Shown piece by piece: positions 1 to 34,328 of a DNA stretch of 64,000 nucleotides; the stretch's first letter is position 1, and the number at the start of each line of letters is the position of its first letter. The stretch is taken from the IMG/VR virus record IMGVR_UViG_3300038361_000164, positions 1 through 64,000 of that record. The stretch is one strand, 5' to 3'. Made by a program: the position numbers and the translations under genes. Below the pieces are notes generated by a model, which saw nothing but the letters and a program-made list of their open reading frames with translations, was not told the origin of the DNA and did not search any database.

Positions 1-1
1 T

Positions 2-1192: not shown

Positions 1193-1195
1193 AAC

Positions 1196-1225
1196 TTGAC
1201 TAGTTTTAGCACTATGATTTATATT
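1196..1225 (+). promoter_or_regulatory. Putative sigma70-type promoter, possibly giving a leaderless mRNA
   Basis: TTGACT-N18-TATATT, then 6 nt, then ATG 1232. Confidence 0.45.
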
Positions 1226-1231
1226 TAAGTA

Positions 1232-1414
1232 ATGAAATTGCAACCGAAAACTAATATAGCAGACGAACTAACTTTGGCACAAAGATTAGAACAAGCTGCT
1301 AAAGAAATAGTAGAAAACCAAGCAGCTAGCGAAGGTGTACATGTAGAAATAACTCCAAAAGTAATAGACGAGATAGAAGAGTATGGCGACAGATTATACG
1401 ACTGGGAATCTTAG
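1232..1414 (+). CDS. Small acidic hypothetical protein (60 aa)
   Basis: ORF follows a promoter-like sequence and overlaps the next gene by 32 nt. Confidence 0.5.
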   Translation: MKLQPKTNIADELTLAQRLEQAAKEIVENQAASEGVHVEITPKVIDEIEEYGDRLYDWES

Positions 1415-2324: not shown

Positions 2325-2339
2325 TAAACAGTAAATAAT

Positions 2340-11501: not shown

Positions 11502-12010
11502 TTACTGCTCGGCTCCTCAATAATTTGTGTTGTCATTAATTCAAAATCTCCGGTTTCTTGTACAAAATATGTATTCATTTTATGTTGTAAATTAGAATAT
11601 ATTAAAAAGAAACCAGTTAGTCCATGATTTTTTCCACCCGATCCTGCAATATCCCATTGAGATGGAATAGGCGCACTGTGCGGATGTGTATGTGTTATAG
11701 CTATGTGCTCGTGCGACGCTTTGGGATTCATTAAACTAGTAGAGTTTAAATACTTAAACCAATCGTTTGGATCGGGCATAAAATCTACTACAGAATTCAA
11801 TCGAGTCTTAGTGTGATGAGCTTTAAAAGCTGAACTATGCTCTTGTGTTTTAGCCAGGTTTATAATTCTAGTGTATTTAGTACTTGTCCAAACATTGTCC
11901 ACTTTGCAGCCGCTCAAAGCCCCGATGATTTCGTCATCAGGGCTCGAAGCTGCGTGAGCTAAATATTCGTTCAATACACTACTAGGTATTTGATGAATAA
12001 TATTTTGCAT
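11498..12010 (-). CDS. JAB/JAMM (MPN+) metalloprotease
   Basis: Upstream Glu (DDEIIG) plus HTHPHSAPIPSQWD, which matches H-x-H-x7-S-x2-D. Confidence 0.92.
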   Translation of the reverse strand: MQNIIHQIPSSVLNEYLAHAASSPDDEIIGALSGCKVDNVWTSTKYTRIINLAKTQEHSSAFKAHHTKTRLNSVVDFMPDPNDWFKYLNSTSLMNPKASHEHIAITHTHPHSAPIPSQWDIAGSGGKNHGLTGFFLIYSNLQHKMNTYFVQETGDFELMTTQIIEEPSSK

Positions 12011-15800: not shown

Positions 15801-15832
15801 TGTTCTTATACCAAATTAATTATATTTGGCAA
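15801..15832 (-). promoter_or_regulatory. Putative extended -10 promoter (copy 1)
   Basis: TTGCCA-N16-TATAAG. The 15-mer TTTGGTATAAGAACA is identical to 41197-41211. Confidence 0.5.
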
Positions 15833-17802
15833 GTGTCGTTACTACAGAATCTTTCAATTTCTGCTAAATTCTTTCTAACTGTTTTAAATGATAATGTTTT
15901 AATATTTTTTATTAATTCATTATATTTTTCCTCAGTTATTTTTTCATAAGGCATTTGTGCGTAAGCCCCTTTTTCTAGTCTCGGTAAGAATGAAACTGAT
16001 TTTAATTTATATTGAAAAATATCTAAAGCTTGTTCAATAAAAGGACCCTCAGTTTCTGGATCAAATGTTATAGTAACTGATACAGAATTATCTGCCCAAT
16101 GTTCTTGCATAAATGCGGCCATTTCTAACTGCTCCCACATAGATACAGTTTCTAGAGTTCTTACTCCTTCACCAACATCTACAGGAATTTCTACAACCAC
16201 AGTTGAATCTTCTTGCCCCTTCACAGGCTCTATTATATATCCAGCTTTTTGCATAGGAACAATGAGTGGACTATTTTTATCTAACTGTATTCGCCTTATA
16301 TAAAAGCGACTTTCGGGGTAATGGATACCAGGAGTACACCCGGTAACAAGACTTGTACTTCCGCTAGGTTTTTGAGTAGTAATTCGAATACTTTTAGGTA
16401 TGGCTAACCAATTTGAATATATATCATCATAATTCTTTAAAACATCATAACCTTTTCTTAGCCATGTTCTTAAAACATCAATTTTATTATTAATTAAAAA
16501 TTGGGCCACACCGCTAACGCTTGTACCTATTCGGCGATTTCGTAACATTATGGCATTAGTACCAGCCCAGCCTGTGTTTAGAAGAGTAATAGTTTTTCCA
16601 TAAAGATATGCATATTTTAAAGATTTAAAAAAGTCTTCTAGCGAATCATGATGAGGTAAATATGCTTCTACTAAATTACACAACTCCCCTTCACCATGAC
16701 CACCTTCGAGGAAAATTTCACCACATGGGTTTGTCAAAACAGTTCTTGAGTCTTTCTGAAGTCCATTACTTGTGTCGCCCATACGTTTATTATTATGAGC
16801 ATTTTCAATCCAAAGTAGTCCAGGTTCTCCATTATTTCGAATACGGGTAGCTATTTCAGAATAGTCCATTCCTAAGGTTGCTTGCACACTGTTGTTACTC
16901 GCCCAGTATATAGACTCTCTTTCGGGATTTACCTTTAAATTTTTTAAATCGAGAAATTCAGTTGAATCATCCCCTCCTAAGAGAATTGCGGATCTTCTTG
17001 TGTTTCCAGCAACAACGGTTTTACCTATCCAGTTAAATAAATCAGCTATAGTTCTTTGAGTTATGAGTTGGTCTACATTTTTATTTAAAATATCTTTCAT
17101 TGCTTTAAACATTTCTTTCAAAGGTCCGGCTCCCGAAGCTGTTCCTCCAAAAGTTTTTATAAGAGCTCCAGCAGGTCTAACCTCACTATAATCAAAATTT
17201 GGACTCTTATTTTTTCCAAAATAAGATCCAATTAGTAATCCTAAAGCCTCTACCCAACCCTCTCTAGAATCAGGAATAACGAAGTCTTCTACTTCTTCAG
17301 TAGGTGTCCTTACTACAATTGTTTTTGCACCTTTTAGATCTGCACCTAAACCTATACCTTGCATAAGTACATCAAATCCAAACATAAAAGGTTTCATTGG
17401 ATCATTTTTCATAAACTCAGTAGTTGTTACTGAGCAATTAAATAACGCTCCAGATAGTTTCTTTTTATGTATAATATCCGTACCTTGCGCAAATAAACCC
17501 CTACCTCCTGGAAGAATCTTCATAGTGTACATTCTATCATACATTTCTTGGGCAGAAAATTGGGCTTTTTGTGGTATCCACTCAAGCCTATGCTGCTCTA
17601 TCCATTCTTTTTGTATATTGTATGTACCCTCAACAACTCGTTGAATTGTTTGCCACCATTCTTCGTTCTTACCATTTTTTAGAATTCGACTGTAGGTTCT
17701 TTTATAGACCAGTTCACCTAGCCCATTAAAACCGAAAGGTGGTTTGCGTCTTTTATATTTATTTAAAAAGGTTTCCGTTAATTGAAAACGATTTTCATTC
17801 AC
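15820..17802 (-). CDS. nrdJ: Class II (adenosylcobalamin-dependent) ribonucleotide reductase, monomeric RTPR type
   Basis: LPGGRGL, FNCS, TNPCGEI, CNLVE, TTQKPSGSTS, and the C-terminal Cys pair FCSNDTCQI. Confidence 0.95.
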   Translation of the reverse strand: MNENRFQLTETFLNKYKRRKPPFGFNGLGELVYKRTYSRILKNGKNEEWWQTIQRVVEGTYNIQKEWIEQHRLEWIPQKAQFSAQEMYDRMYTMKILPGGRGLFAQGTDIIHKKKLSGALFNCSVTTTEFMKNDPMKPFMFGFDVLMQGIGLGADLKGAKTIVVRTPTEEVEDFVIPDSREGWVEALGLLIGSYFGKNKSPNFDYSEVRPAGALIKTFGGTASGAGPLKEMFKAMKDILNKNVDQLITQRTIADLFNWIGKTVVAGNTRRSAILLGGDDSTEFLDLKNLKVNPERESIYWASNNSVQATLGMDYSEIATRIRNNGEPGLLWIENAHNNKRMGDTSNGLQKDSRTVLTNPCGEIFLEGGHGEGELCNLVEAYLPHHDSLEDFFKSLKYAYLYGKTITLLNTGWAGTNAIMLRNRRIGTSVSGVAQFLINNKIDVLRTWLRKGYDVLKNYDDIYSNWLAIPKSIRITTQKPSGSTSLVTGCTPGIHYPESRFYIRRIQLDKNSPLIVPMQKAGYIIEPVKGQEDSTVVVEIPVDVGEGVRTLETVSMWEQLEMAAFMQEHWADNSVSVTITFDPETEGPFIEQALDIFQYKLKSVSFLPRLEKGAYAQMPYEKITEEKYNELIKNIKTLSFKTVRKNLAEIERFCSNDTCQI

Positions 17803-18988: not shown

Positions 18989-19651
18989 TTATTTTTTAAT
19001 AGCTTCCACGTATAAAGACCTGTACGAGGCATTCGCCTCTGACGAATATGTTCCTTCAAATATAAAATGCTTTGATTGACTTATTTGATATTCCATTTTA
19101 GTAATGTTTGTTTTTTTAAACCCGGCAATTTGTAAATCCTTACATATGGTTTCATAATCCCACGCATTTTGATGGGCTAGCGCCTCTTTACCTAATAAAT
19201 GAGGCTGTCCTGTTGGAGATATAAAATCCTCTCTTAAACATTCAAAGATAGTATAGTCTTTATTATACTTAGTTTTTGCTCGTGCTGTTTCTTGTTTAAA
19301 AAGTTTATAGTTATGGTTTCTGTTAATATATTCTTTAATACTTCTTTCCACATCTGGAATCACTAGTCTTAGTATTCCTTCAGGGTTTAAAACTCTATAA
19401 ATCTCTTTAAATAATAAGGGTGATTTATATATACTAACATGTTCAAAAACATGAGACCCATACACACATTCTATTGAGTTATTTGGAAGAGGTATTTTTG
19501 TAAAATTTTTAAAATCTATTATTATATCTCCAAGTGTTGGGTCTACGTCTACCGTACACCAGGCGCTATCTGGTTTTTTCCAACCCCATCCTGGGCCAAA
19601 ATGTATTTTAGTCCAAATAGGGGGTTCATATTTTCGTTTTTTTAAGTCCAT
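18989..19651 (-). CDS. SAM-dependent methyltransferase (type 11-like)
   Basis: IHFGPG, SIECVYGSHVFEHV, EIYRVLNPEGILRLVIPD. Confidence 0.85.
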   Translation of the reverse strand: MDLKKRKYEPPIWTKIHFGPGWGWKKPDSAWCTVDVDPTLGDIIIDFKNFTKIPLPNNSIECVYGSHVFEHVSIYKSPLLFKEIYRVLNPEGILRLVIPDVERSIKEYINRNHNYKLFKQETARAKTKYNKDYTIFECLREDFISPTGQPHLLGKEALAHQNAWDYETICKDLQIAGFKKTNITKMEYQISQSKHFIFEGTYSSEANASYRSLYVEAIKK

Positions 19652-19662
19652 TTTTATAGTGG

Positions 19663-20436
19663 TTATAAAGCGTTAATACTATTAATTTCTTCTAGTACGT
19701 TTTCCGCAGTATCATCTTTTCAAATTCATTTTTGGTTCTCTGTAGCTATGTGTGGGTGTTCTCCTACACTCATTCCTGTTGTTCTCTTTAATCAACTTGC
19801 AGAACTGATCATAATTCCAGGTGTCGTTATTTTAAATACTCTATATGCAATATCAGGATTCATCATCATTAAAGCTCCACAGCCGTTTGATACTAACCAA
19901 TTCATCTTTGACTTCATATAAAAAGCCATTCTTAGTTCAACATTTATATTATATAAAGAAGGTTTATTTTCTAAATCGTCTATAATAAGATCATTTTTTT
20001 TATTAAATATTTTTCTTCACATTTTTACATTAGAATTTCTTGCTACTTCATACCGCCTTTCTCTAAGAGTGATGAGATTAGTAGTGTTATACACCATATC
20101 TAAAGCTGTTTGTCCAGCAGTTATGTGCTTAAAATTTTTATCAAAATAAACGTCCTTATCGATGGAAACAGTGTTATAGCCCAAACCAATACCCTTAGTT
20201 CCAATACCTACACCGCGGCAATTGGGCATCATCATAGCCAAAGGCATTAAAAGATGAGTTATTCTCCATTCTCAATCGTAATTAGCAGCTTTAGAATGCT
20301 TTTTAATGGAGGTAGTATTAATAGTAATATAAAAAGAATCTTCGTTATTTAATAATCTTTCTTGCTCACATAATGTGAGAAAGATAACAAAATCATAGGT
20401 AATAGGTTGATGCGCTAAATTATAACTAATGATCAT
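19663..20436 (-). CDS. Hypothetical protein in the glycan cluster, 257 aa (5 TGA=Trp)
   Basis: ATG 20436 (overlapping the upstream gene's end) to TAA 19663 is in one frame through 5 TGA and includes ORF 20017..20247. Confidence 0.75.
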
Positions 20437-21115
20437 ACTTATGTCCTTCTAGTCCAAAATTAATGAATGGATTTAATGATAATATGTTGCATCTATATTC
20501 TTCCGTCAATAACAATTTCAATACTTTTGTTGATTTTTCTATTTTAGATAACCAGACTTTGTAATGCTCTTCTTGATCATGTTCACCCCAGGCTATGCTT
20601 ATAGTTTCTTTAGTATGATATCCAGTAAAAAAACTTTCATCATCTAAAGTACCACAGTCGTGCCCGACAAGTATTATGTTCTTAGCACCCATATAAGCTG
20701 CTAAATGCATAGCTGTTGTAAAAGTGGTCCATGAAACTATTAAAGTATCCGATGCTCTTGGCAAAATATGTATTTTAAGTTCATTAAAATTATGGTTAAA
20801 CACAACAACATTATATAAATGATCATAATTATTTTTAATATGGTTTAAATTGATCGAGTTGTTTCCACCGTAACTTCCTTTTGAAATAAAATGTATTACA
20901 TTGGTCAAGGCTTTATCTTGCAGAATTTTATCCAATAATTGTGTTTCTTTTCTTACAAGATAAGTTGGATGTATTTTTTTATACGTTTGATTTACTCCAA
21001 TTAAAGTCTTGTTATTAAAAAAAGAATTGTCAACATAGTCACAGGATTTTCCAGCACCCATAACATAGATATCTTCGTCTTTATGTATATTTTTAAATTC
21101 TTTAAGAGCTCTCAT
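20426..21115 (-). CDS. DUF115/MptE-like (Maf-type) sugar-transfer-associated protein
   Basis: FKNIHKDEDIYVMGAGKS, LIGVN, AMHLAAYMGAKNIILVGHDC. Confidence 0.8.
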   Translation of the reverse strand: MRALKEFKNIHKDEDIYVMGAGKSCDYVDNSFFNNKTLIGVNQTYKKIHPTYLVRKETQLLDKILQDKALTNVIHFISKGSYGGNNSINLNHIKNNYDHLYNVVVFNHNFNELKIHILPRASDTLIVSWTTFTTAMHLAAYMGAKNIILVGHDCGTLDDESFFTGYHTKETISIAWGEHDQEEHYKVWLSKIEKSTKVLKLLLTEEYRCNILSLNPFINFGLEGHKYDH

Positions 21116-22146
21116 TATAGTTTTGTAAGAAATTCCTTTATTCTTTGAGCATCAGATTCAAAATTAACTACTTCGTTAAACTTAGCCTTTACTCTGGCAG
21201 ACCACTCTGGCCAGTGTGCTTCGGCATCGCGAATTTCGTTTACTATTTGTTCTGTGCTTTTACCATGCACATCTATCACAGTCTTTCCTGGAACAAATAA
21301 CATTTCAGGAGTTGAGCCTCGATGATAGGACATATTAACTATGACGGGCTTACCGGCCGCAAAAGCTTGATGTATATTATATCCATAGCCATCTCCCGAA
21401 GGTTTGACATGCCAAAGAAACCCAGTTTCACATAAATTTTGATCTAAGTCATCTGTAGCACCATCACGATTTCCTGCTCCATATATTTTTATATCCCAAT
21501 CAACTAAGCGCTGCTCTATTTCTGCAAGCTTAGGAGCGGTAGGAGAATAGTGTAATAAGTTTATAATACTCTTTGTATTGGTGTTTTCTGTATTGGAAAA
21601 ACGCTCTACTTCAAACTCTTGATGATAATGACACGTATTTGCATTTGGCCAAGTGGAATTACTTTTCTTAGCAGAAGTTAAATAGTTTTTAATTGGGTAA
21701 TTCCAATTGTCATTTCCAGCTTGAAAAATAAATTTGGCATTTGGCATATACTGTGAAATTAGTCGTTGGAAAAGATCTATATGACTGATATGCGAGGCTA
21801 AGACTACATCAAACTTCATTGTTTTAAAAGCTGGAAGTGTTATACCTCTATTAACTCTATTTCTTGGAGAAGTGCAAAAGTAAACTCCTGGAGTATCCGT
21901 AGCAATAGTTTCTGTGTGAACGTATTGTATTTTAGGAAGGGTTTCTCCGTGGATTGTTTTTAAGTTTTCTGTATTGAAATCTAAAAACTGTCTAGCAGTT
22001 CCCTCTGCTGGATATACATTCCAAAAGTTCTCATGCCACCATTCCATTCCTATAGGTCTGTATAATTCCCAACCAAGTCTTTCTTCAAAAAGTAAATGGA
22101 GAGAATGATATAAATCTTCGTGATGTAAGTCTGCTAAAATTTTCAT
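21115..22146 (-). CDS. Glycosyltransferase, GT-B/GT4-like
   Basis: C-terminal LWHVKPSGDGYGYNIHQAFAAGKPVI and LFVPGKT. No TGA. Confidence 0.75.
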   Translation of the reverse strand: MKILADLHHEDLYHSLHLLFEERLGWELYRPIGMEWWHENFWNVYPAEGTARQFLDFNTENLKTIHGETLPKIQYVHTETIATDTPGVYFCTSPRNRVNRGITLPAFKTMKFDVVLASHISHIDLFQRLISQYMPNAKFIFQAGNDNWNYPIKNYLTSAKKSNSTWPNANTCHYHQEFEVERFSNTENTNTKSIINLLHYSPTAPKLAEIEQRLVDWDIKIYGAGNRDGATDDLDQNLCETGFLWHVKPSGDGYGYNIHQAFAAGKPVIVNMSYHRGSTPEMLFVPGKTVIDVHGKSTEQIVNEIRDAEAHWPEWSARVKAKFNEVVNFESDAQRIKEFLTKL

Positions 22147-22148
22147 AA

Positions 22149-22997
22149 TTATCAATTATTGTTGGTTTCGTATCCTAGTTCAATTAATTCGTTGCCTGCG
22201 ATTTCTTTAAAAATATCAATTTGTTGGGGAGTTCAAGATTTTCAACGACTGCCCGCAGAGGCCTTTGCATTTCCAAAAGTACTGTGTTTATCTATATTAA
22301 TTACCTTGCAACTATCAAAGCTGGTAATTTTGGTCTGCACTTCTATTGCTTTTTGTTGCATACGTTTTTTATCCATAGGAATGTTAATAAAATTAAAAAG
22401 ACTTTCCGCAGTTTTATATCCATTTTTAACTCAATCCTCTAAAAACGTTATATTATAATTAGACATTCCTTTTCTACAATCCAAGGCAATTCTAGCTCTG
22501 TTTCTTTGTCCTTTGCAAAAAACTTTGAAATATTCTAAAGTCCTATATTCATGATTTGCTGTTTTTTTCTGAATAATAGATTCTATATGATTTCTAGGGT
22601 CCCGAGTATTAAGTACAAACTCCCAATCTCCGGGCAAAGAATTAAGTTCTGAAACTCCTCATCTAGTTAAAGTTTCTCCGTCGTAGGGATTTGGAACCAA
22701 CGCACTGTTAGTTTCTTCTCCTCACCAGTTTCAAACATAAGTATATCAAAATTGATATTCTAAGTTAGAATTTTGCTTTTCCCCTATTAACTTCAAGTGG
22801 TCGTGCGTTAAGTGCTGAACGGGACAGTGGATAGGAGATTCGGCCAATAAGGTACCTTGTGGCTCATAAATATGCTCATCTCCACGCTTTAAACTTTGTC
22901 TTTTTTTGTCTCATTCTTGAGGCTTTATATCTTGGATATGGTTTCTTACTAAATTAGAGCCACCCCTTATGTACATAAATAATAGTATATTTTTCAT
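22149..22997 (-). CDS. PAPS-dependent sulfotransferase, 282 aa (9 TGA=Trp)
   Basis: 5'-PSB-like YIRGGSNLV, 3'-PB-like LNTRDPRNHIES, FLED(W), and C-terminal R(W)KS(W)TPQQIDIFKEIAGNELIELGY. One frame from ATG 22997 to TAA 22149. Confidence 0.82.
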
Positions 22998-23009
22998 TTT
23001 ATATGTTGA

Positions 23010-23876
23010 TTATGCTGCCCAGTTACTTAAACATGTGTCTTTAGTAAGATCATTTCAAGCAGTTAGAGCTTTGTTTTTTAAATCCTCATCTATAGAATGT
23101 AAGTAAGTTTCTATGTGACTTGGAAATTGACCTGGATATAGTTCTACGTGTTTTAAAAAGAAACCTAACCGAGACAACTCTAAAGCAGAGTCCGTGTCAA
23201 AAGATTCTTTCTTTTCTAATTTGTAATAAAAACTCATTAAGTATCCAACGTGAAATCATCCCTCTTGGAAGTGAGATCATCCTTGTCTATAGTTAGCGCG
23301 ATGTGCGCCAAATTTTGCGTTATTATCCGCTAATCCTTTTATTCATTTTCTGCCATGTGATATTTCATCTGCGGTAAGAGAGTCCCACATTTCTTTCTTA
23401 ATTAATAAAAATGCGTTTTCCCAATGTGGGTTAGGCACAATTCACGGGTATACATTAGAAGGTTCGAATGTTTGATTTAGTACAGGGGCAATAGAACCGG
23501 TAAAAACATAAGATGGTGAGTAATGAGATTCTTGAATATGGTGACAAGAAAAATCATAACCTCCCTCCAAAAAGTCTTTTATAAATACATCTACAGTAGA
23601 AGGATCGCTTATAAAACAATCATTATCTATCATAAGTATTAATTCAAAGTCTCCTTGTAATCGATTTTTAAATCGAACCATTCCTTGGTCATAGGTTAAA
23701 TGCCCACTGTTCCAATATTCAGTATTTGGACCTGTATACGCTCCCCAAGCTTCTCTGCCTGTGTCTTGTATAATTACATTTGTATATCCAGATTTTCAAA
23801 GTCTGGAAATTGTGTCTTCAAAAAAGCTATTTTTTCTGTGATGATTGCTAATAATTAATACTTTAGTTTTATCCAT
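23010..23876 (-). CDS. GT-A/GT2-like glycosyltransferase, 288 aa (6 TGA=Trp)
   Basis: TAATG-coupled start. DxD-like ILMIDNDCF. Joins ORFs 23442..23681 and 23055..23237 in frame. Confidence 0.72.
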
Positions 23877-25027
23877 TATATTCGTACAGATGGTCTTGTT
23901 TTATTAAAAAATCTGGAAGCCTTATCCGCCATTTCAGTGCCAGAAACCAAATCCTGATGTAGATAGGTAGGATGATATTCTCCCGGAATGGGGTGCTTGT
24001 CGTAATAAATATCTATTTCTTTTAAGATATCTCGCCAACCAGCAGAATAATGCTTTCCGCGATAAGGCACCAACTCTCCCTGACCGCACCAAGCTACGGA
24101 AAAGTGGGCTGGCAATGTTTTAGGGTGTCCGTGCCTTTTTCCTAAAGTAGTCATTTTATCATCGGCGAACGCTCGTCCACAAAATTCTTCAGTAAATCCC
24201 TCTGTAGCATTAAACACAGTTCTGGACATAATATGAAATCCATGAAAATTTGGGATAAATTGTATCTTTGAAGATAAAAGACCTTCTACGTGTTGTTGAC
24301 AAAAATCTTTACTTTTATCTAAAAAATTTTCATCATCTAAACTAATCAATTGAGAGGATATGAAATTTGGAATATATACATCACACAAAGCACTTGGATA
24401 TCTTAGATAGTCCCTGACACAATGAACCGAATCATTGCTATAATTAGAGCCTCCTTTCCCGTCTTTTACTTCTTGCATATGTTCTAAGAGCCAATCTTTT
24501 TCTTGATTAGTAACTCTGGCAAATATGGCATGAGGAGAGCAATAATAATTATCTCCTCAAATTTTAACATACTCTTCAAGTTCTTTTAAGCTAAATAGAT
24601 ACAAAAAGTCCCCAGGAGTAATAATCAAAGTATCTCCGCTAGAAGCTTCCACTGCTAAATTATATAACAATCCAGAACTCATTCATAAAAAAGATCTAGA
24701 TATATCATATAAAGTCCCGTTTTTAAACTTTTCAACATTTTCTTTTAGCCCGTTTCTAAATTCTTCTTCGAAGATATTTTTTGTATCATAATGCACCATT
24801 AAACGATCTAAGTAGTCGGTAGTATCTTTAAAAGTTCTTGTAACTACTTTTAGGTTAGGTATCTCTATCTCTAGGTTTTTAAAGTGCTCGGCAGAGCCAT
24901 CTTCAACACGATCGTCGTGAGCTAAAACAATTTCAAACTCAACACCTTGGTTATGTTTTAATAAAGCTCGAATAAACATTTCAGTGTCTCATTTAGAATT
25001 GAGAGCACAACAGCATATACTTATCAT
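23876..25027 (-). CDS. GT-A/GT2-like glycosyltransferase, 383 aa (3 TGA=Trp)
   Basis: MISICCC, FEIVLAHDD..EDGS, YNLAVEASSGDTLIITPGD, GFTEEF...FADD. Joins ORFs 24683..24979 and 23876..24478. Confidence 0.78.
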
Positions 25028-25029
25028 TT

Positions 25030-26166
25030 TTATTGATGGTTAGAAAATAATTTTCGTAAAGTATTATAAATACGTTCTCTAAACTCTCCCACTACCCAAA
25101 ATCCGCTAGGAATGAATACAGGATGAATTTTAGAGTGTATTTGACATGTTCCGTTTGGAAAGCAATTGTGGATAGTATTATCAGGCCACATCGGAGTAGT
25201 TTGTATGTTAGCATCCTTAAACACTTGATTACATTTATCTATATTAATATTTGTGTTATTTAAAACAAATCCAAAAGTTCACCAACTTGGATTCGATTCC
25301 ACATCGGTTATTATTTGGTATTCACTAGGAATAACTGTTTTAAACAATGTAACATTTTCTCTAGAAACAGCTATAGATTGTTTAGCTAATTTTAGATTAG
25401 CAAGGCCTATACTTGCAGCAATGTCGTTCATATGAAACTTATATCCAGCTTCCTGTATAGAAGACGTCATTTGATGCTCCAACCGATCCATTCCTTTTGG
25501 AACTTTTCGATCTATACCAAATCATTTCAGCTTAATAGCTCGTTGATAATTATTTTCACAATTAATTGCAAGAGCTCCGCCGTCTCCGGTAGTAAGATGT
25601 TTAATTGATTGAAAAGAGAAACAAACATAATCCCCTCAATGTGAAATATGTTTATTTTTATAAAGAGTATCTACTCCGTGAGCAGCGTCAAGTATAAGAG
25701 GTATGTTTTTCTTTTTGCAGATTTTTACTAACTCATTCAATCTAAAAGGCACTACTCCACCTACCAAAACTAACATAACAATATTAAAAGTTTGTTTGTT
25801 AGCTTTTAAAGTCTTGATAATCTCATCACAGTCTAAACACAGAGTAGTATTGGATACTTTCCCTCAAATCACAGAATTACCTGTATTTGTTATAGCACAA
25901 TTGGTAGCAACCATGGTAAAAGGAGTTGTGAGTACGGAATTTTGCGAGGAGGACATAGCAAGTTTTAAGGCCATCATTAAGGAGCTTGTACATGAATTTG
26001 TACAAACAACTTTATCATGCTTAAATCAAGTATTTAATGCTTTTGTAAATTTTACAACTTTAGGACCTTCTCCTATCATTCCCGAATCTAACACATTTCC
26101 TACTTCATTTTTTGCTGTAGTAGACATTGCTACTTTAAACATTGGTATTGTGTTTGTGCTAGACAT
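25030..26166 (-). CDS. DegT/DnrJ/EryC1/StrS PLP-dependent sugar aminotransferase, 378 aa (5 TGA=Trp)
   Basis: SGMIGEGPKV, NSCTSSL, ILDAAHG, (W)GDYVCFSFQSIKHLTTGDGG with the PLP Lys, LK(W)FGIDR, GYKFHMNDIAASIG. Confidence 0.93.
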
Positions 26167-26744
26167 TATAACTCCTTTCTTGTGCACAAAGTTACAGCGT
26201 TGTGATTATTAGCCTCTACAACTGTATAATCTCAACAAGTATTAAACCATTTTTCTTTGAATATTATATTTCAGGGTTTATATTTATATTTTTTTTGCCA
26301 CTTATTGTGGATGCCGCCTTCTAAAATAAAGGCTTTATTTGAACTATTATCAAATAATTTTATGAGAGAAGGTAAATTATTATAATGATTGCAAACATCT
26401 ATATGAACTAATCCCAGATCTTCGGTTATAAGTTCTTTAAGTTTGTTTTCCGTTCCTTTGACTACTGCTCATTCACAAACTAAATTTGCTTTTTCTAAAT
26501 TAGAAATAGTTATTTTAAAATTGGCGTGTGTTTTTGCGTAAGGAGGCTCTATATATTCAGATTCAAAAGAATCTATAGTTATAATCTTACTTTTAGCTGC
26601 TAGTGCTTTCCCTATGAGAATAGCACTAGCACCCTGTTGTGTACCGATTTCAATTACTAATTTAGGATTAGTATTTTTGACAAAATCAATGATTTTAGTT
26701 TGTAAATGTGAGTTGGAATATGACGTGGTAAATACAGTAGACAT
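26166..26744 (-). CDS. Class I SAM-dependent methyltransferase, 192 aa (3 TGA=Trp)
   Basis: VIEIGTQQGASAI, ITIDSF, VHID. TAATG overlaps at both ends. Confidence 0.82.
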
Positions 26745-27166
26745 TAAAAGTCCTCCCGTAATTCTACCCAATTGTTCTCAAAGTCTTGTATAAATATATT
26801 AAACCAACCTTTTGGATTTTTATACTTATGTACTATGACATAAGCTGGTAAAACTTTTAAAAATTCCTCTCTACTACCCTTAGCACCTGTATGAAGACAA
26901 ACGTGATTTATGCCTTGTCTGTTGAATTGCCAAGTTCCGACATTTCCAGAGCCTTTGTGAAATTGATGAATTTCTATGTCAGGTGTGTCCGTGTCAGTGA
27001 GGGTATATCTGTGTATGGTTGCAACGTCATCTATATTAAACAAAGCTTTAGAAATTGTAGAATCAAGTTCGCTTTCCCAGATACAGGTATATCCTACAAT
27101 TTTACACCAAAATTCTTCAAATAAAAGTATGTTGTTTGTTATCCAACCAATGTGATCTATGTGCAT
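26744..27166 (-). CDS. VOC/glyoxalase superfamily protein
   Basis: IDHIGW, IEIHQF, GINHVCLH, FIQDFENNWVEL. Confidence 0.85.
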   Translation of the reverse strand: MHIDHIGWITNNILLFEEFWCKIVGYTCIWESELDSTISKALFNIDDVATIHRYTLTDTDTPDIEIHQFHKGSGNVGTWQFNRQGINHVCLHTGAKGSREEFLKVLPAYVIVHKYKNPKGWFNIFIQDFENNWVELREDF

Positions 27167-27178
27167 AATTTATTGCTC

Positions 27179-27844
27179 CTAGTTGTTTATCCATAAGGTT
27201 TGCTGTCCATCCAATAATAGCGTCCAACCGTGGTCAAAAAGCCACTCCCTAGCTAAACGAGGTTTTCCGCCCCCGGCTAAGTTGTTGTCATCTATTAATA
27301 TAACGGACTGATCTGTTAATTTATCGATTGCTGCTTCCAACTCCTTCAAACAATGTTCTTGACAAGGGTTAATAATATCACTATGAAATTGAACAATATT
27401 GTCATCAGAAAGAACGCAATCGAATCCACCAGGAAGATCTTCCATAGGATAATCAAAACTATCTAAATATAATAAATCTATTTGATGTTCGCAATTGTTT
27501 AAATATTCTACTGAGTCCATAAAAACATATTCTACATAATCATATTGCTTTGTAAATCTTTTTACTCGATTTAAATGCTCCTGAACATTATCAACTGTAA
27601 TTAACTTTCCACCTAATAGATTGATAGTTTCGGCAAAAAGAGCAGTAGACATGCCACCACCCCAATCATTTTCCTCACGCTGACATCCGGTTTCTACTAT
27701 TAGCTTCCCATTGCGTTGATAAAATAAGTTTAAAGCAGCTTTCATAGTAGGATACCTACCATCAAGCTGATTGTATTTATTAAAAAAATCTGTGTTTCTA
27801 ACGTATAAAAACTTTTTTATAGCGTCTGTAAGTACGTTTTCCAT
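27179..27844 (-). CDS. SAM-dependent methyltransferase (Methyltransf_24-like)
   Basis: IVETGC, LITVD, DSVEYL, IDLLYLDS, ILIDDN. Confidence 0.85.
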   Translation of the reverse strand: MENVLTDAIKKFLYVRNTDFFNKYNQLDGRYPTMKAALNLFYQRNGKLIVETGCQREENDWGGGMSTALFAETINLLGGKLITVDNVQEHLNRVKRFTKQYDYVEYVFMDSVEYLNNCEHQIDLLYLDSFDYPMEDLPGGFDCVLSDDNIVQFHSDIINPCQEHCLKELEAAIDKLTDQSVILIDDNNLAGGGKPRLAREWLFDHGWTLLLDGQQTLWINN

Positions 27845-28842
27845 TGTGTTTGTATGGTTTCTTGTCCAAAATATTGTAAAGCAGTAGCTCTACCATTTGC
27901 TCCTATTTCTCTAGCTAAGTCTATATCATTTAAAAGCAAGTCACAATATTTTCGTAATTGATCCACATCGTCGCTAATAAATCCGTTAATACTGTTTCGT
28001 ATAATTGTATCTATTTCATACAATCCACTAACTCCTAGGTATTGAGCATTTCCATGCACAGGTCCCAAAGCTATAACTGGAATCCCGGTCATTAAAGCTT
28101 CAATAAAGTTTAAAGTATAGCTCGCAGGATGTGTGCCTGTATAAAAATAAGCTCTATTATTTCTCATTTCAGCTTTTAATTGCTCAAAGGAAACTTTACC
28201 AGGAGAGAATTCTAAATGCTCATTTCCAGGTCCAAACAATATTCTTGGTACACTTTTAGTAACTTCATCATAAATAGGAAAATTACAATGAGGTGTACGC
28301 TGTTGCATTGATTGATTAAAAGTAACAATTCTTTTATTTTTACCATTCCAGTTTTTATATTCTTCTGGATCTTTGTAAAAACGAATTAGTGCATCACCTC
28401 CTAAGTATCCAGGAATATTCATTTCGTTTGGAGAATACCTTACGATTTTTAATCCCTGCTCTCTAAAAGGTCTAAGCTCTGCTTCAGTGTTAGTAATAGA
28501 TTGTCCTATGGTTCTCCATATCACAACTTTATGCTTCATAGCTTCCCAGTTTCCTGAAATCCATCTAGGAATGTGCATTACAATAACACAATCAAACATA
28601 TCTACAAATTCTTTAGTTAATCTATCTTTCCCATCTACCGCTCCTTGACAAAGCGTATGATACATGTCTAAATGCTTTTGCTCATACTCAATGTTTAAAA
28701 GTCCGGGACGTAAAGTAGCGTCTCCAGGATTTTTTGGCTCTACATACGCGCCAGGAGAAAAGACATAATGTCCCATCCCAGTTAAAAGTTTTACTTCGTC
28801 ATACTCTAGAATACTGTGACAACTTAAATATAATATTTTCAT
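27817..28842 (-). CDS. GT4-like glycosyltransferase
   Basis: NFIEALMTGIPVI and IRNSINGFISDD. Confidence 0.85.
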   Translation of the reverse strand: MKILYLSCHSILEYDEVKLLTGMGHYVFSPGAYVEPKNPGDATLRPGLLNIEYEQKHLDMYHTLCQGAVDGKDRLTKEFVDMFDCVIVMHIPRWISGNWEAMKHKVVIWRTIGQSITNTEAELRPFREQGLKIVRYSPNEMNIPGYLGGDALIRFYKDPEEYKNWNGKNKRIVTFNQSMQQRTPHCNFPIYDEVTKSVPRILFGPGNEHLEFSPGKVSFEQLKAEMRNNRAYFYTGTHPASYTLNFIEALMTGIPVIALGPVHGNAQYLGVSGLYEIDTIIRNSINGFISDDVDQLRKYCDLLLNDIDLAREIGANGRATALQYFGQETIQTQWKTYLQTL

Positions 28843-29813
28843 TACGACTGTAACCTCGCTAGATCGGAGTCTACCATTTTTATTACAAGTTCTTTAAAAC
28901 TAACTTTAGGAGACCATCCAAGTTCCTGTCTTGCAAAAGCAGAATCGCCTCTTAAAACATTTACTTCTGCAGGACGCATAAATCTTGGATCTTGTTTTAT
29001 ACAATGACGCCAGGTTTCATACCCAATGTGTGTAAACGCGACATCTAAGAAATCTTTAATTGAGTGGGATTTTCCAGTAGCTATTACAAAATCTGTAGGC
29101 TCCTTTTGCTGTAACATCGCCCACATTGCTTTTACATATTCAGGTGCATATCCCCAATCACGTCTAGCTTCAAGATTGCCTAAAGTTATGTGATTTTGAA
29201 TACCCAATCTTATCTTTGCAACACCGTCTGATATTTTTCTAGTAACAAATTCTAATCCACGTCTTTCTGATTCGTGATTAAATAAAATGCCACAACAGTT
29301 ATACATTCCATACGATTCTCTATAATTTACTGTAATATGATGACCGTAAAGTTTAGAAACCCCATAAGGCGATCTTGGACTAAAGGGAGTAGTTTCATCC
29401 ATTAACTCTGTTGTTTGGTTTCCAAACATTTCTGATGAGCTAGCTTGGTAAAACTTTATTTTTTTATTGGTATCAAACTCTCTAATCGCTTCCAACATTC
29501 TTAACACACCTAATCCTGTAACATCACTTGTCTGTTCTGGAGTGTTCCAGCTTTCACCAACAAAAGATTGAGAGGCTAAGTTGTATATTTCGTCGGGATC
29601 GCATACCTTTAAAGCTCTTAGGAGTGAATTTTGGTCTGTCAAATCACCTTGTATAAAAGTAATTTTTTCTTCCAAATGTGCGGTATTTGTTCTATTTTTT
29701 GTGGAAGCTCTACGTTCTAAACCAAAAACTTCATAATTTTTGGTTAATAAAAAATCAGCTAAATGGCTTCCATCCATTCCATTTATGCCTGTAATTAAAG
29801 CACGTTTACTCAT
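28842..29813 (-). CDS. gmd: GDP-mannose 4,6-dehydratase
   Basis: ALITGINGMDGSHLA, GDLTD, EIYNLASQS, FYQASSSEMFG, SPYGVSKL, NHESERRG, RDWGYA. Confidence 0.95.
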   Translation of the reverse strand: MSKRALITGINGMDGSHLADFLLTKNYEVFGLERRASTKNRTNTAHLEEKITFIQGDLTDQNSLLRALKVCDPDEIYNLASQSFVGESWNTPEQTSDVTGLGVLRMLEAIREFDTNKKIKFYQASSSEMFGNQTTELMDETTPFSPRSPYGVSKLYGHHITVNYRESYGMYNCCGILFNHESERRGLEFVTRKISDGVAKIRLGIQNHITLGNLEARRDWGYAPEYVKAMWAMLQQKEPTDFVIATGKSHSIKDFLDVAFTHIGYETWRHCIKQDPRFMRPAEVNVLRGDSAFARQELGWSPKVSFKELVIKMVDSDLARLQS

Positions 29814-31428
29814 TCGTATTGTTGGTTAAGGCTACCCATTGTTCTTTAATGGAATCAATGTGTACTTGTTGTTTAATAATTTCTTTGCCCAATAAAGCTT
29901 GAGCCTTATAATAAGCATAATTTTCTTTTAATTCAAGCAATTGTTTAGCTGCATGTGCCACATCCGGTTCGTACTGTTCTCCAACTTTAATTTCTCTCGT
30001 AATATTGCCAGAGTATCTAGCTGTCGAAGCTTCATGGCTGTTAACCCATAAAATACCTGGAACATCTATTAAATCAAGATGTGCTGTGTTTCTACTCAAT
30101 ATTACAGGTATTCCGCAAAGCAAAGCTTGTCTTGGTGTGACACTATATCCTTCCCCTGCGGAGATAAATATATAAGCACTTAAATTTTTCCACCAAGCTA
30201 AATAGTCTTCAAAAATGAGAGTTTCATTTTGAAAACTAATATTTTTTGAATCTAGAGCAAGTATGCTTTCTAAATGTTCTACCATTTCTGGAGTGTTAAC
30301 AAAATCCCTGGAGTGTATAGCAAGAAAATCATTTTCGCTTTTCATTACATTAAAGCTCTCAATAATTTTATCTACTTTTTTACGTTCCCATAGTCCGCCA
30401 GAATAACCAAAAGTTATTTTGTCCGTAGGTGGGTTATTTTCTAAAATTGAATAGTGTGCTATGTGCTCTAACTTGTCGATAGTGGCTTTTGGATATTCTT
30501 TTTGTAAATGTTCATGTAGCCAACTATTAGTTATAACTGTATGGTCGAACATTTCAATCAATGGTTGCAATAAATCAACTCCAGTACTTTCCCACATAAG
30601 GTAAAAATAGGATTCTATGTTATATTTGTTTTTTAAATCTTCAAGCACACGTCTTGTATGCGTAAATATGTTTTCTGCAATGTCTATGCCGGAAACATGT
30701 ATAAATTTAGCATTTTTGTATTTCTCAGGATTTTCTGCATGTGCATTTTCTAAAGTCAAATATAACTTTAACCATTCAAAATCTTTGATATGTCTGTTTA
30801 AATTCTCTTGGGAAAAATCATCTATAGTTTGTAGAAATCTGAAATGCTGTCCAATACGATCATATGCTCTGTAAAATGACACGTTTTTAAAATTACGAAA
30901 AACGTTATCATATAAATTAAACATATGTGCTCCCAGACCATCTTCTCTTAAATAAAAACCATACATAATAATTGGAGTATCCAACCCGTCCTTAACAGGC
31001 AATAGGTGGTCGATATTAATATTTTTAATATGTTCCATTATATCCAATTCACAGGTTTTAACTTCAAATCCTTTTATCTTTAGTTGTTCAAATTTAGAGG
31101 GAGTTTCTTCAAGTGCAGCCATTAATCCTTGAGGTTTTACCAAATCTTTAGGATATCTTGGGGAAATAACGGCATGGACAATTCCATGAAATTGTGTTTC
31201 TTCGTATAAAGAAGTCACAGTTGTAAATTCTAGTTCAGTTTTATTAGCTGATAAAAAAATTTCTGTGGTTATGGGGGAAATAATGCGGTTGCCCCAAACT
31301 AATGTTAGAGTAGTGTTTATATCGTATGGAGTGTTATATGTGACCCTTACTTTATATATGCCGCTTGAGTTAACGTTTTTAACGTCGTGTAGTGTAACAA
31401 TTTTTTGTTGTGGGGTTTCTCTTATCAT
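29806..31428 (-). CDS. GT4-like glycosyltransferase with N-terminal extension (540 aa)
   Basis: FGYSGGLWERKKVD and FISAGEGYSVTPRQALLCGIPVILS. Confidence 0.8.
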   Translation of the reverse strand: MIRETPQQKIVTLHDVKNVNSSGIYKVRVTYNTPYDINTTLTLVWGNRIISPITTEIFLSANKTELEFTTVTSLYEETQFHGIVHAVISPRYPKDLVKPQGLMAALEETPSKFEQLKIKGFEVKTCELDIMEHIKNINIDHLLPVKDGLDTPIIMYGFYLREDGLGAHMFNLYDNVFRNFKNVSFYRAYDRIGQHFRFLQTIDDFSQENLNRHIKDFEWLKLYLTLENAHAENPEKYKNAKFIHVSGIDIAENIFTHTRRVLEDLKNKYNIESYFYLMWESTGVDLLQPLIEMFDHTVITNSWLHEHLQKEYPKATIDKLEHIAHYSILENNPPTDKITFGYSGGLWERKKVDKIIESFNVMKSENDFLAIHSRDFVNTPEMVEHLESILALDSKNISFQNETLIFEDYLAWWKNLSAYIFISAGEGYSVTPRQALLCGIPVILSRNTAHLDLIDVPGILWVNSHEASTARYSGNITREIKVGEQYEPDVAHAAKQLLELKENYAYYKAQALLGKEIIKQQVHIDSIKEQWVALTNNTNE

Positions 31429-33578: not shown

Positions 33579-34328
33579 TTATAGTGTCAAATAATTCTTT
33601 TGCGGAGCGATGTGCAATTTATCCAGATATGATGGAAAATACTCCCTAAATAAGGAATTTACCAATTCTGGAGAATTAGTGTTTTCGGACAGATGTCCGA
33701 CAGTTACCCACTTAAGCTCGTCTAAGTTTAAACTATTTAAAAATTCCATAGTTTGTGTGTTACTTAGATGCCCAAAAGGGCTCGCAATTCGCTCCTTAAG
33801 TAGGACAGTGTAGTCTTCATGTTTCCATAGTAGTTCTTCTGAGTAATCGGCTTCAATAAAATAGGCGTCACATCCAGCGACACACACTTGCATTAACTTA
33901 CTAATGCTTCCGGTGTCTGTTATATACGCAAATCTCTTATCACCCTCTTTAATTATAAATCCAACACTTGCTTTAGAATCATGTTGTGTGCTAAAAGCGG
34001 TGATTGTTAAATCGCCTACAATAACTTGTTCCCCTCCCTCTATGTGAGAAAGAATGGCACATTTTTTAAATATTGTAGGTTTAACGAGATAAGATTGCTT
34101 CGGCATGAACACTGCACATTGTGATTTTCTGGCAAGTATCCCTGCCCCTGTCACGTGATCACCGTGTTCATGTGTAATAAATAACGCTTTCGGAACGAGT
34201 GCTTCGCCGTATGCTTCTACTATTTTTTTATAACTGACTCCAGCATCTATTGTGATAACAGTTCCAGTGTCAGATTCTATTACAGTACAATTACCCTTAC
34301 TACTGCTGTATAAGAAATTGATTTTCAT
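33579..34328 (-). CDS. Metallo-beta-lactamase fold hydrolase (YycJ/WalJ-like nuclease)
   Basis: SSSKGNCT, IDAG, FITHEHGDHV, HD, TDTG, GHLSN, GHLSENTN. ATG 34328 overlaps the upstream TAA. Confidence 0.9.
   Translation of the reverse strand: MKINFLYSSSKGNCTVIESDTGTVITIDAGVSYKKIVEAYGEALVPKALFITHEHGDHVTGAGILARKSQCAVFMPKQSYLVKPTIFKKCAILSHIEGGEQVIVGDLTITAFSTQHDSKASVGFIIKEGDKRFAYITDTGSISKLMQVCVAGCDAYFIEADYSEELLWKHEDYTVLLKERIASPFGHLSNTQTMEFLNSLNLDELKWVTVGHLSENTNSPELVNSLFREYFPSYLDKLHIAPQKNYLTL

What the first reader, a model, noticed from the sequence alone, without database searches (positions are those of the whole stretch)
22149..22997. Hidden phage sulfotransferase, the most heavily recoded gene in the window
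It is almost invisible in standard code (9 of 11 Trp are TGA, including F-W-Y-T-Y-V-W-N-W-W-G). It has PAPS-binding-type motifs and the typical C-terminal W...AG..L..LGY...W. A sulfated viral glycan would be unusual and could mimic host or environmental sulfated polysaccharides.
Basis: partly seen in the sequence, partly recalled or inferred. Interest (0 to 1): 0.6.

Follow-up and report, generated by a model that had tools for sequence, protein, structure and literature searches.

The report
Recoded sulfotransferase in phage glycan cluster
A marine jumbo phage carries a real but divergent sulfotransferase gene that is readable only when TGA means tryptophan. It sits among sugar-building genes, so the phage probably makes a sulfated glycan, which has not been shown for any phage.

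Summary
Window 22149-22997 (minus strand) is a 282-codon frame with 9 in-frame TGA and 2 TGG. It is the most TGA-dense credible gene in the window.

Direct Pfam, PHROGs, NCBIfam, PDB and word searches of the table-4 protein found nothing. The exhaustive search found 90 relatives, the best at 38-45% identity over the full length.
- In their alignment, Trp is the commonest residue at 6 of the 9 TGA sites. TGA is therefore Trp, not Gly.
- The family profile hits solved PAPS sulfotransferases (CurM ST, E 1e-12).
- 61 of 73 aligned members (the window protein itself gives no hit) touch Pfam Sulfotransfer_3.
- A confident model of the closest relative matches only sulfotransferase folds (Z 10.6-12.9).
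- The window protein keeps the RxGS loop and the invariant R132...S140 motif.

The gene lies between a GT-A-fold and a GT4-like glycosyltransferase, in a cluster with GDP-mannose 4,6-dehydratase, a DegT aminotransferase and methyltransferases. The same module recurs on at least five other phage-like contigs, two of which carry an APS kinase.

This phage has no PAPS-synthesis genes, no tRNA(UCA), no RF1 and no TrpRS.

The sulfotransferase call is well supported. The glycan acceptor and where the glycan ends up are inferred.

The parts
22149..22997 (-). Sulfotransferase gene: 282 codons plus TAA stop, 9 in-frame TGA read as Trp
   Evidence: frame; 90 relatives; sulfotransferase family and fold
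22956..22967 (-). Codons R11-G12-G13-S14: the 5'-phosphosulfate-binding loop (RxGS)
   Evidence: In A1, 66 of 72 relatives have R, 68 of 72 have G and 62 of 72 have S. It aligns with PRSGST of CurM ST.
22578..22604 (-). Codons R132-D-P-R-N-H-I-E-S140: the 3'-phosphate-binding motif (R-x7-S)
   Evidence: R132 and S140 are invariant in 73 sequences. The motif aligns with LVRHPYSVIES of CurM ST and RNPRDVLVS of SULT2A1.
22233..22286 (-). Codons H238-S-T-F...R251-W252..W255: conserved C-terminal block. By position it corresponds to the S/T-F-RKG..W nucleotide-binding region of sulfotransferases (inferred).
   Evidence: S239 93%, F241 91%, R251 94%, W252 84%, W255 87% conserved
22152..22154 (-). 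Last sense codon, TGA (W282), directly followed by the TAA stop. The other in-frame TGA codons are at 22911-22913, 22746-22748, 22731-22733, 22722-22724, 22659-22661, 22431-22433, 22242-22244 and 22233-22235.
   Evidence: Relatives have W at 46 of 47 ungapped positions for site 282.
21115..22146 (-). GT4-like (GT-B fold) glycosyltransferase. The likely ATG is at 22146, two bases after the sulfotransferase stop. It has 0 TGA and 10 TGG.
   Evidence: Atlas matches by features and by structure to mostly viral glycosyltransferase clusters, TM 0.69-0.87. Relatives sit next to the sulfotransferase in L002, L005 and L006.
23010..23876 (-). GT-A-fold protein with an IDNDCF (DxD) motif, probably a glycosyltransferase; 6 TGA
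   Evidence: family and motif; model of the L002 relative, pLDDT 96.6; Foldseek matches to GT-A transferases and sugar nucleotidyltransferases; TGA sites aligned with invariant W
23876..25027 (-). Conserved 383-residue protein of the module; 3 TGA. The relative's N-terminus weakly resembles GT2/rhamnosyltransferase.
   Evidence: 40% identical to L002 5957-7117; Pfam Rhamno_transf E 0.007 on the L002 relative. The function is not established.
25030..26187 (-). DegT/DnrJ/EryC1 sugar aminotransferase; 5 TGA
   Evidence: Pfam E 1.1e-55; PDB 4xau E 2.8e-43, with TGA aligned to W at two sites
28842..29813 (-). GDP-mannose 4,6-dehydratase; 0 TGA
   Evidence: NCBIfam TIGR01472 E 4.7e-122; 47-53% identical to the dehydratase next to the sulfotransferase in L002, L005 and L006
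18989..21115 (-). Cluster tail: SAM methyltransferase (18989-19651), unknown protein with 5 TGA (19663-20436), MptE-like/sialyltransferase-like protein (20426-21115)
26166..28842 (-). Methyltransferase (26166-26771, 3 TGA), glyoxalase/VOC-like protein (26744-27166), Methyltransf_24 (27179-27844), GT1-family glycosyltransferase (27817-28842)
   Evidence: GT1 is 53% and MT24 is 42% identical to genes in L006
29806..31428 (-). GT1-family glycosyltransferase (540 residues) at the head of the cluster
   Evidence: Pfam Glyco_trans_1_4 E 3.1e-6

Best explanation
The frame encodes a PAPS-dependent sulfotransferase of a divergent, mostly phage-borne subfamily.

How it is made (partly shown, partly inferred): the ribosome must read nine UGA codons as Trp. 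That UGA means Trp is shown. In this 210-kb marine myovirus, UGA-as-Trp occurs mainly in baseplate, tail-fibre and some glycan genes. I infer that this ties the enzyme's synthesis to a phase of infection in which UGA suppression is on.

How it works (inferred from conserved motifs): the RxGS loop (R11-S14) holds the 5'-phosphosulfate of PAPS. R132 and S140 hold its 3'-phosphate. The sulfo group is passed to a hydroxyl or amino group of an acceptor.

What it acts on (inferred from context): the acceptor is most likely a sugar of a glycan that the neighbouring genes build. GDP-mannose 4,6-dehydratase and the DegT aminotransferase would make a GDP-4-keto/amino-6-deoxyhexose. The methyltransferases would decorate it. 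GT-A, GT4-like and GT1 transferases would assemble it.

Source of PAPS: it must come from the host, because this phage has no APS kinase or ATP sulfurylase.

Where the glycan ends up is open. Virion proteins are my first guess, because the recoding matches that of the tail genes. The infected cell surface is the alternative.
For: Real gene:
- 90 relatives at E<=1e-3, 12 of them at E<=1e-30; the best is 38-45% identical over the full length.

TGA=Trp:
- W is the commonest residue at sites 84, 92, 113, 252, 255 and 282. At site 89 the six closest relatives have W.
- The same holds in the neighbouring GT-A gene (invariant W at two TGA sites) and in DegT.

Sulfotransferase identity:
- The A1 profile hits CurM ST (4gbm, E 1.2e-12), OLS ST, SULT2A1 and TPST1/2.
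- 61 of 73 members hit Sulfotransfer_3 and 48 of 73 hit Sulfotransfer_1. P0002-P0006 hit at E 1.6e-5 to 3e-4.
- AF2 model of P0002: pLDDT 89.6, pTM 0.88.
- All top Foldseek and VIA matches are PAPS sulfotransferases, Z 10.6-12.9 over about 200 residues.

Motifs kept in the window protein: R11, G13, S14, R132, S140, S239, F241, R251.

Context:
- Glycan genes lie on both sides.
- The module GT4-like / sulfotransferase / GDP-mannose dehydratase recurs in L002, L005/L006, L009 and two further contigs.
- APS kinase lies within about 4 kb downstream of the sulfotransferase in L002 (E 4.5e-37) and L009 (E 1.9e-49).

Possible transcription: the three contigs of a seawater metatranscriptome that fall in the 4.7-kb stretch all lie on this gene.
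Against: - The window protein itself gives no hit in Pfam, PHROGs, NCBIfam or PDB phmmer. Membership rests on transitive homology.
- Its own structure was not predicted.
- No conserved catalytic His or Glu could be pinned down.
- The phage has no PAPS-synthesis genes.
- No tRNA(UCA), RF1 or TrpRS was found, so how UGA is read is unknown.
- Fold matches do not separate carbohydrate, protein-tyrosine and small-molecule sulfotransferases.
- The RNA contigs could be DNA carry-over.
Confidence: 0.85

Rival explanations
1. It is an active PAPS sulfotransferase, but the acceptor is not a glycan. It could be a protein tyrosine (TPST-like), a lipid or acyl intermediate (CurM-like), or a small molecule.
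For: TPST1/2 are the top Foldseek hits. CurM and OLS ST are the best sequence-profile hits. Z-scores are tied across acceptor classes, so homology gives no guidance on the acceptor.
Against: The gene is packed between glycosyltransferases, with 2 and 12 nt gaps. In every context examined it travels with GDP-mannose dehydratase and a GT4-like transferase. No polyketide, lipid or peptide-maturation genes lie next to it in the window.
Confidence: 0.15
2. It has the sulfotransferase fold but does not transfer sulfate. It could be an inactive scaffold, or an enzyme with other chemistry, as retinol dehydratase is.
For: No catalytic base was identified. The protein is too divergent for Pfam. Retinol dehydratase appears among the fold matches.
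Against: All PAPS-contacting motif residues are kept, and R132 and S140 are invariant across 73 sequences. APS kinase is linked in two relatives, which makes sense only if PAPS is consumed.
Confidence: 0.05
3. The frame is a dead gene or a chance ORF, and the TGA codons are genuine stops.
For: TGA probably still ends a few otherwise TGA-free genes in this genome (TGA at 95% or more of ORF length in six ORFs). No suppressor tRNA was found.
Against: Full-length similarity to relatives runs across all nine TGA codons. Six of the sites fall on Trp-dominated columns. The same pattern is seen in DegT, the GT-A gene, and the baseplate and tail-fibre genes. Reading TGA as sense raises the length held in frames of 300 or more codons from 73 to 110 kb.
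Confidence: 0.02
4. TGA encodes glycine (code 25, as in Absconditabacteria and Gracilibacteria phages), not Trp.
For: Gly is the commonest residue in relatives at two TGA sites: sulfotransferase site 89 and GT-A site 145.
Against: Trp is the commonest at 6 of 9 sulfotransferase sites, tops 4 of 6 GT-A sites (invariant at two, tied at one), and aligns at 2 of 5 DegT sites. At sulfotransferase site 89 the closest relatives have W.
Confidence: 0.02

Closest known systems
Pfam Sulfotransfer_3 (PF13469) type bacterial sulfotransferases; solved examples are the CurM and OLS sulfotransferase domains (4gbm, 4gox)
   Same: Same fold. Same RSGS-type 5'-PSB loop, R-x7-S 3'-PB motif and (F/Y)EDL block. 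These are the best profile hits (E 1e-12).
   Different: Identity is only about 14-17%. The window protein scores below every Pfam threshold. It has a variable insert between residues 17 and 80 and its own conserved W-rich blocks (WWG, RW..W, terminal W). It is a free-standing enzyme in a glycan cluster, not a polyketide-synthase domain.
Phage-encoded Sulfotransfer_3 genes listed as auxiliary genes (for example in OM43 phages and Synechococcus phage S-SRM01; PMC10580990)
   Same: Marine phages carrying a PAPS-type sulfotransferase whose role is unknown.
   Different: No GenBank phage matches this protein by tblastn at E 1e-3. Here the gene is part of a conserved multi-gene glycan module and is recoded with TGA.
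Stop-codon-recoded (code 4) phages described by Borges et al. (bioRxiv 10.1101/2021.08.26.457843)
   Same: TGA is read as Trp, is concentrated in structural genes and is absent from replication genes. A suppressor tRNA is often not detectable; that paper found one in only 35% of code-4 phages.
   Different: Those phages came from gut microbiomes, whereas this one is from seawater. Recoding here also covers part of a sugar-modification cluster, gene by gene. This phage carries an amber tRNA(CUA) instead of an opal suppressor.
Carbohydrate sulfotransferases in bacterial glycan pathways (NodH, Stf0; from my own knowledge) and the heparan-sulfate 3-O- and N-sulfotransferases
   Same: PAPS-dependent sulfation of a sugar within a glycan pathway. 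The heparan enzymes appear among the fold matches at Z 10.7-11.8.
   Different: No specific sequence relationship was shown, and the acceptor here is unknown.

Membership tests
PAPS-dependent sulfotransferase superfamily | 5'-phosphosulfate-binding loop (K/R-x-G-S/T) after the first strand | tested here: met
   R11-G-G-S14 is present. R, G and S are conserved in 86-94% of the family. The loop aligns with PRSGST of CurM ST.
PAPS-dependent sulfotransferase superfamily | 3'-phosphate-binding motif: Arg, then Ser eight residues later | tested here: met
   R132 and S140 are invariant in 73 sequences. They align with the same motif in CurM ST and SULT2A1.
PAPS-dependent sulfotransferase superfamily | Sulfotransferase alpha/beta fold | tested here: met
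   Tested on the closest relative P0002 (38% identical, full length), not on the window protein. The model has pLDDT 89.6. The 50 best PDB entries are all sulfotransferases, Z 10.6-12.9.
PAPS-dependent sulfotransferase superfamily | Score above the curated Pfam threshold for Sulfotransfer_1, _2 or _3 | tested here: not met
   The window protein has no hit even at E 10. The five closest relatives (P0002-P0006) score 21-26 bits, mostly just under the 22-27 bit cut-offs. This shows divergence; it does not show a different fold.
PAPS-dependent sulfotransferase superfamily | Catalytic base (His or Glu) near the acceptor site | tested here: inconclusive
   No invariant His or Glu occurs in the N-terminal half. 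H62 and H238 are only partly conserved.
PAPS-dependent sulfotransferase superfamily | PAPS-to-PAP turnover with an acceptor | not testable with these tools
   Needs a biochemical assay.
Code-4 (TGA to Trp) recoded phage | In-frame TGA aligns with Trp in relatives that use the standard code | tested here: met
Code-4 (TGA to Trp) recoded phage | Recoding concentrated in late or structural genes and absent from replication genes | tested here: met
   Baseplate and tail-fibre genes carry TGA. RNR, RecU, the primase and most of 84-180 kb do not. Exception: the tail sheath gene has none.
Code-4 (TGA to Trp) recoded phage | Phage-borne opal suppressor tRNA(UCA), RF1 or TrpRS | tested here: not met
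   None found by ARAGORN, Rfam or Pfam searches of the whole record. This feature is not obligatory in the published set.
Glycan-pathway (carbohydrate) sulfotransferase | Encoded within a sugar-nucleotide and glycosyltransferase cluster | tested here: met
   the synteny is conserved in six contexts
Glycan-pathway (carbohydrate) sulfotransferase | The acceptor is a sugar | not testable with these tools
   Inference from context only.

The most novel reading that the evidence does not exclude
Unrelated marine jumbo phages share a mobile gene module that builds a sulfated, methylated amino-deoxyhexose glycan. Some copies carry their own APS kinase and up to three sulfotransferases. The glycan is placed on the virion, or on the infected cell, giving the particle a surface like the sulfated polysaccharides common in the sea. 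In this phage the sulfation, amination and some transfer steps are switched on only when UGA is read as Trp. That would make a genetic-code switch a timer for glycan maturation.
Probability: 0.25. Interest if true: 0.75.

Novelty: new member of a known kind. Interest (0 to 1): 0.5.

Why it matters
If the enzyme is active, this would be a lead to the first sulfated glycan made by a bacteriophage. My two full-text searches for that idea found no such report.

Sulfated polysaccharides dominate marine organic matter and cell surfaces. A phage that sulfates its own or its host's glycans could change adsorption, stickiness to marine gels, grazing or receptor masking.

The case also shows a practical point. 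Gene callers using the standard code break this gene into a 44-residue fragment, and family HMMs miss it even after recoding. Such functions are therefore under-counted in viromes.

Finally, recoded and unrecoded genes alternate within one cluster: TGA makes up 31 of 48 Trp codons in six genes and 0 of 47 in eight others. This gives a clean natural test of whether stop-codon recoding acts as a gene-by-gene translation gate.

Tried and rejected
Searches of the table-4 protein that found nothing:
- Direct Pfam, PHROGs, NCBIfam and PDB scans gave only chance hits (zf-DNL, haemoglobin).
- The word-index protein search returned none. The exhaustive search was needed.

I therefore did not fold the window protein. 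I folded the closest relative with an alignment that leaves the window protein out.

The search for related loci failed with the broad alignments and found nothing with the single protein. A six-sequence alignment found one viral contig.

tblastn of the sulfotransferase against 50,697 GenBank phages found no match. The tail sheath finds only remote hits, so the phage lineage and its host remain unknown.

Whole-record searches found no APS kinase, ATP sulfurylase, CysD/PAPS reductase family, RF (PCRF domain) or class-Ib tRNA synthetase.

An ARAGORN low-threshold 'tRNA-SeC(tca)' at 106498-106588 was rejected. Rfam does not support it, and at that threshold there are 114 calls.

TAG recoding was rejected. 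No TAG-terminated gene has an uncovered long in-frame continuation.

Recent transfer does not explain the TGA mosaic, because GC and GC3 are uniform across the cluster.

Population variation at TGA sites could not be used. The seawater contigs are identical to the window. A 13-letter 'joint' 21723-24290 in run X9 rests on a single contig at depth 3.4 that the tool did not list among its joints, so I did not interpret it.

The promoter and terminator scan was uninformative: 59 promoter-like sites against 60 expected.

A profile of the GT-A family against PDB sequences found nothing. Only the fold search did.

Full report
**1. What is in the sequence**

The finding's coordinates hold a frame on the minus strand. 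It starts at ATG 22997 and ends at TAA 22151-22149. Under table 4 it gives 282 residues.
- Nine of the eleven Trp codons are TGA: residues 29, 84, 89, 92, 113, 189, 252, 255 and 282.
- Two are TGG: residues 91 and 125.
- Under table 11 the frame falls apart. The public protein collection knows only a 44-residue piece of it (P0038).
- Among credible ORFs of the window it has the most TGA codons and the highest TGA density.

**2. Where the window comes from**

The window is the first 64 kb of a 210,263-bp IMG/VR virus record estimated at 99% complete.
- GC content is 35.9%. The record carries 26 tRNA genes and a tmRNA.
- A tail sheath, a baseplate wedge and a tail fibre mark it as a contractile-tailed jumbo phage.
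- At least nine seawater metagenome runs hold 83-100% of the sampled words of this stretch, and their contigs are identical to the window.

**3. Is TGA really Trp?**

Reading TGA as sense raises the length held in frames of 300 or more codons from 73 to 110 kb. Reading TAG as sense gives almost no gain. Alignments then settle which residue TGA encodes.
- *Sulfotransferase family.* Trp is the commonest residue in relatives at six of the nine TGA sites: 25, 49, 42, 61, 63 and 46 sequences at sites 84, 92, 113, 252, 255 and 282. At site 89 the family majority is Gly, but the six closest relatives have Trp.
- *Neighbouring GT-A gene.* Two TGA sites fall on columns where all 25 relatives have Trp.
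- *DegT aminotransferase.* Two of its five TGA sites align with Trp in solved homologues.
- Gly is the top residue at only two sites in all, so code 25 is rejected.

TGA-bearing genes are clustered at 410-3221, in part of 19.6-26.8 kb, at 41.6-84 kb (structural genes) and at 180-208 kb. Replication genes are free of TGA.

I found no tRNA(UCA), release factor or TrpRS. That is not unusual: only about a third of published code-4 phages show a detectable opal suppressor. How UGA is decoded here remains unknown.

**4. What the protein is**

Single-sequence searches failed. The exhaustive search of 1.84 billion representatives found 90 relatives. Twelve score E<=1e-30, and the best are 38-45% identical over the full length.

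An alignment of 73 sequences (A1) shows the following conservation:
- invariant R132 and S140, within RD(P/G)RNxIES;
- near-invariant R11, G13 and S14, within RxGS;
- conserved E187, S239, F241, R251 and Y276.

R-x-G-S and R-x7-S are the 5'-phosphosulfate and 3'-phosphate binding signatures of PAPS sulfotransferases. I take that from established knowledge of the family. Further evidence:
- The A1 profile hits solved sulfotransferases and nothing else of note: CurM ST 1.2e-12, OLS ST 2.3e-12, SULT2A1 about 5e-10 and TPST1 about 1e-9. The two motifs are aligned in these hits.
- 61 of 73 members hit Pfam Sulfotransfer_3 and 48 hit Sulfotransfer_1 at E<=0.01. The five closest relatives (P0002-P0006) hit at E 1.6e-5 to 3e-4, around the curated thresholds.
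I therefore modelled the closest relative P0002 with 22 other relatives. The model has pLDDT 89.6 and pTM 0.88.
- Every leading Foldseek match, and all 50 best VIA-align entries, are PAPS sulfotransferases. Z is 10.6-12.9 with about 200 aligned residues spanning the whole model.

The protein is therefore a divergent member of the PAPS sulfotransferase superfamily with its cofactor-binding residues intact. No catalytic base could be named.

**5. Surroundings**

The gene sits in a tightly packed minus-strand array from 31428 down to 18989, between replication genes (class II RNR and RecU on one side; DUF669, AAA_24 and a primase-polymerase on the other). In reading order the array contains:
- GT1 glycosyltransferase;
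- GDP-mannose 4,6-dehydratase (TIGR01472, E 4.7e-122);
- GT1 glycosyltransferase;
- Methyltransf_24;
- a glyoxalase-like protein;
- a methyltransferase;
- DegT aminotransferase (E 1e-55);
- a 383-residue conserved protein;
- a 288-residue protein with a DxD motif, whose relative folds as GT-A (pLDDT 96.6);
- the sulfotransferase;
- two bases later, a GT4-like GT-B transferase;
- an MptE/sialyltransferase-like protein;
- an unknown protein;
- a methyltransferase.

**6. Relatives in other contigs**

The same module recurs elsewhere. GT4-like, sulfotransferase and GDP-mannose dehydratase relatives lie together in:
- L002, a 76-kb JGI contig;
- L005/L006, a 193.6-kb IMG/VR contig of GC 64% and standard code;
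- L009, a 132.5-kb contig with a phage endonuclease I;
- two Logan contigs.

Several of these carry two or three sulfotransferase-like genes. L002 and L009 carry a strong APS kinase gene, within about 4 kb and 2 kb downstream of the sulfotransferase respectively (127.9 and 168.1 bits against a cut-off of 21.1).

An APS kinase next to the module makes sense only if PAPS is being consumed. This is the best indirect support for real sulfotransferase activity.

The GC-64% phage shows no match to this phage's tail sheath. It also has no APS kinase. The module therefore appears to be shared between phages that are not close relatives.

**7. Mechanism proposed**

- *Shown:* the frame, TGA=Trp, family and fold membership, conserved PAPS-binding residues, the glycan-gene context, and its conservation.
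- *Inferred:* the enzyme sulfates a sugar of a glycan assembled from a GDP-mannose-derived amino-deoxyhexose. PAPS comes from the host, because this phage has no APS kinase, ATP sulfurylase or CysD-type gene. The enzyme is made only when UGA is read through.

Within the cluster, six genes use TGA for 31 of 48 Trp codons. Eight interleaved genes use it for 0 of 47. GC3 is the same across them. This points to gene-specific selection rather than recent import.

Whether the glycan decorates virion proteins or the cell surface is open. A weak hint of expression exists: the only three contigs of a seawater metatranscriptome that fall in the 4.7-kb stretch all lie on this gene. DNA carry-over is not excluded.

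**8. Comparison with what is known**

- Phage genes with Sulfotransfer_3 domains have been listed in marine viromes, with the remark that their role is unclear (PMC10580990). A deep-sea brine-pool virome study listed a sulfotransferase gene among the most highly expressed viral genes.
- TGA recoding of late genes is described for gut phages.
- No GenBank phage has a detectable relative of this protein.
- My two full-text searches for the idea found no report of a sulfated phage glycan.

I therefore file the gene as a new, divergent member of a known enzyme kind, in an interesting and conserved viral context.

**9. Verdict**

- The sulfotransferase reading is supported, at about 0.85 to 0.9.
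- A glycan acceptor is likely, at about 0.6.
- A virion destination and mimicry of sulfated polysaccharides are speculative.
- Interest is moderate.

Noticed in passing
window 1-250 (5'-open + strand ORF 2-1192) and G000 about 208.9-210.26 kb: Both ends of the linear record lie inside one collagen-like Gly-X-Y repeat (GSS/GTS, 9- and 27-nt units). The record was probably cut within a repeat-bearing fibre gene of a circularly permuted genome. The antisense 'ORFs' there, with 21 and 74 TGA, are artefacts.
   Followed up: partly
G000 115365-115439 (outside the window): The phage carries an amber suppressor-type tRNA(CUA), although TAG shows no sign of being recoded. It has no opal tRNA(UCA), although TGA is recoded.
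   Followed up: partly
window 18989-31428: Recoding is a gene-by-gene mosaic inside one same-strand array. TGA makes up 31 of 48 Trp codons in six genes and 0 of 47 in eight interleaved genes, with uniform GC3.
   Followed up: partly
G000 110989-111099, 111396-111463, 111610-111677; tmRNA at 104475-104855: Next to the tRNA array lie two sub-threshold Y-RNA-like (YrlA) matches, a tRNA-like element with a shortened anticodon arm, and a phage-borne tmRNA (tag GKTQFALAA).
   Followed up: no
window 11477-12010 (-), and five ORFs elsewhere in G000: In otherwise TGA-free ORFs, a single TGA lies at 95-99% of the table-4 frame length. TGA probably still serves as a stop in some genes of the same genome.
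   Followed up: no
window 3245-4873 (+): The tail sheath gene has no in-frame TGA (8 TGG), unlike the baseplate and tail-fibre genes. Not all structural genes are recoded.
   Followed up: no
L002 488-1237 and 8825-9661; L009 6110-6826 and 9160-10008; L006 9162-9992: Relatives of the module carry two or three sulfotransferase-like genes of different subfamilies, which suggests multiply sulfated products. L009 also has a dual-specificity phosphatase-like gene and an RF-1-domain gene nearby.
   Followed up: partly
window 34328-37084 (-) and 15820-17802 (-): An AEP-TOTE-type primase-polymerase (918 residues) and a class II (B12-dependent) ribonucleotide reductase flank the glycan cluster.
   Followed up: no
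window 22134-23008: In seawater metatranscriptome run X21, the three identical 151-nt contigs that fall within 20400-25100 all lie on the sulfotransferase gene.
   Followed up: partly
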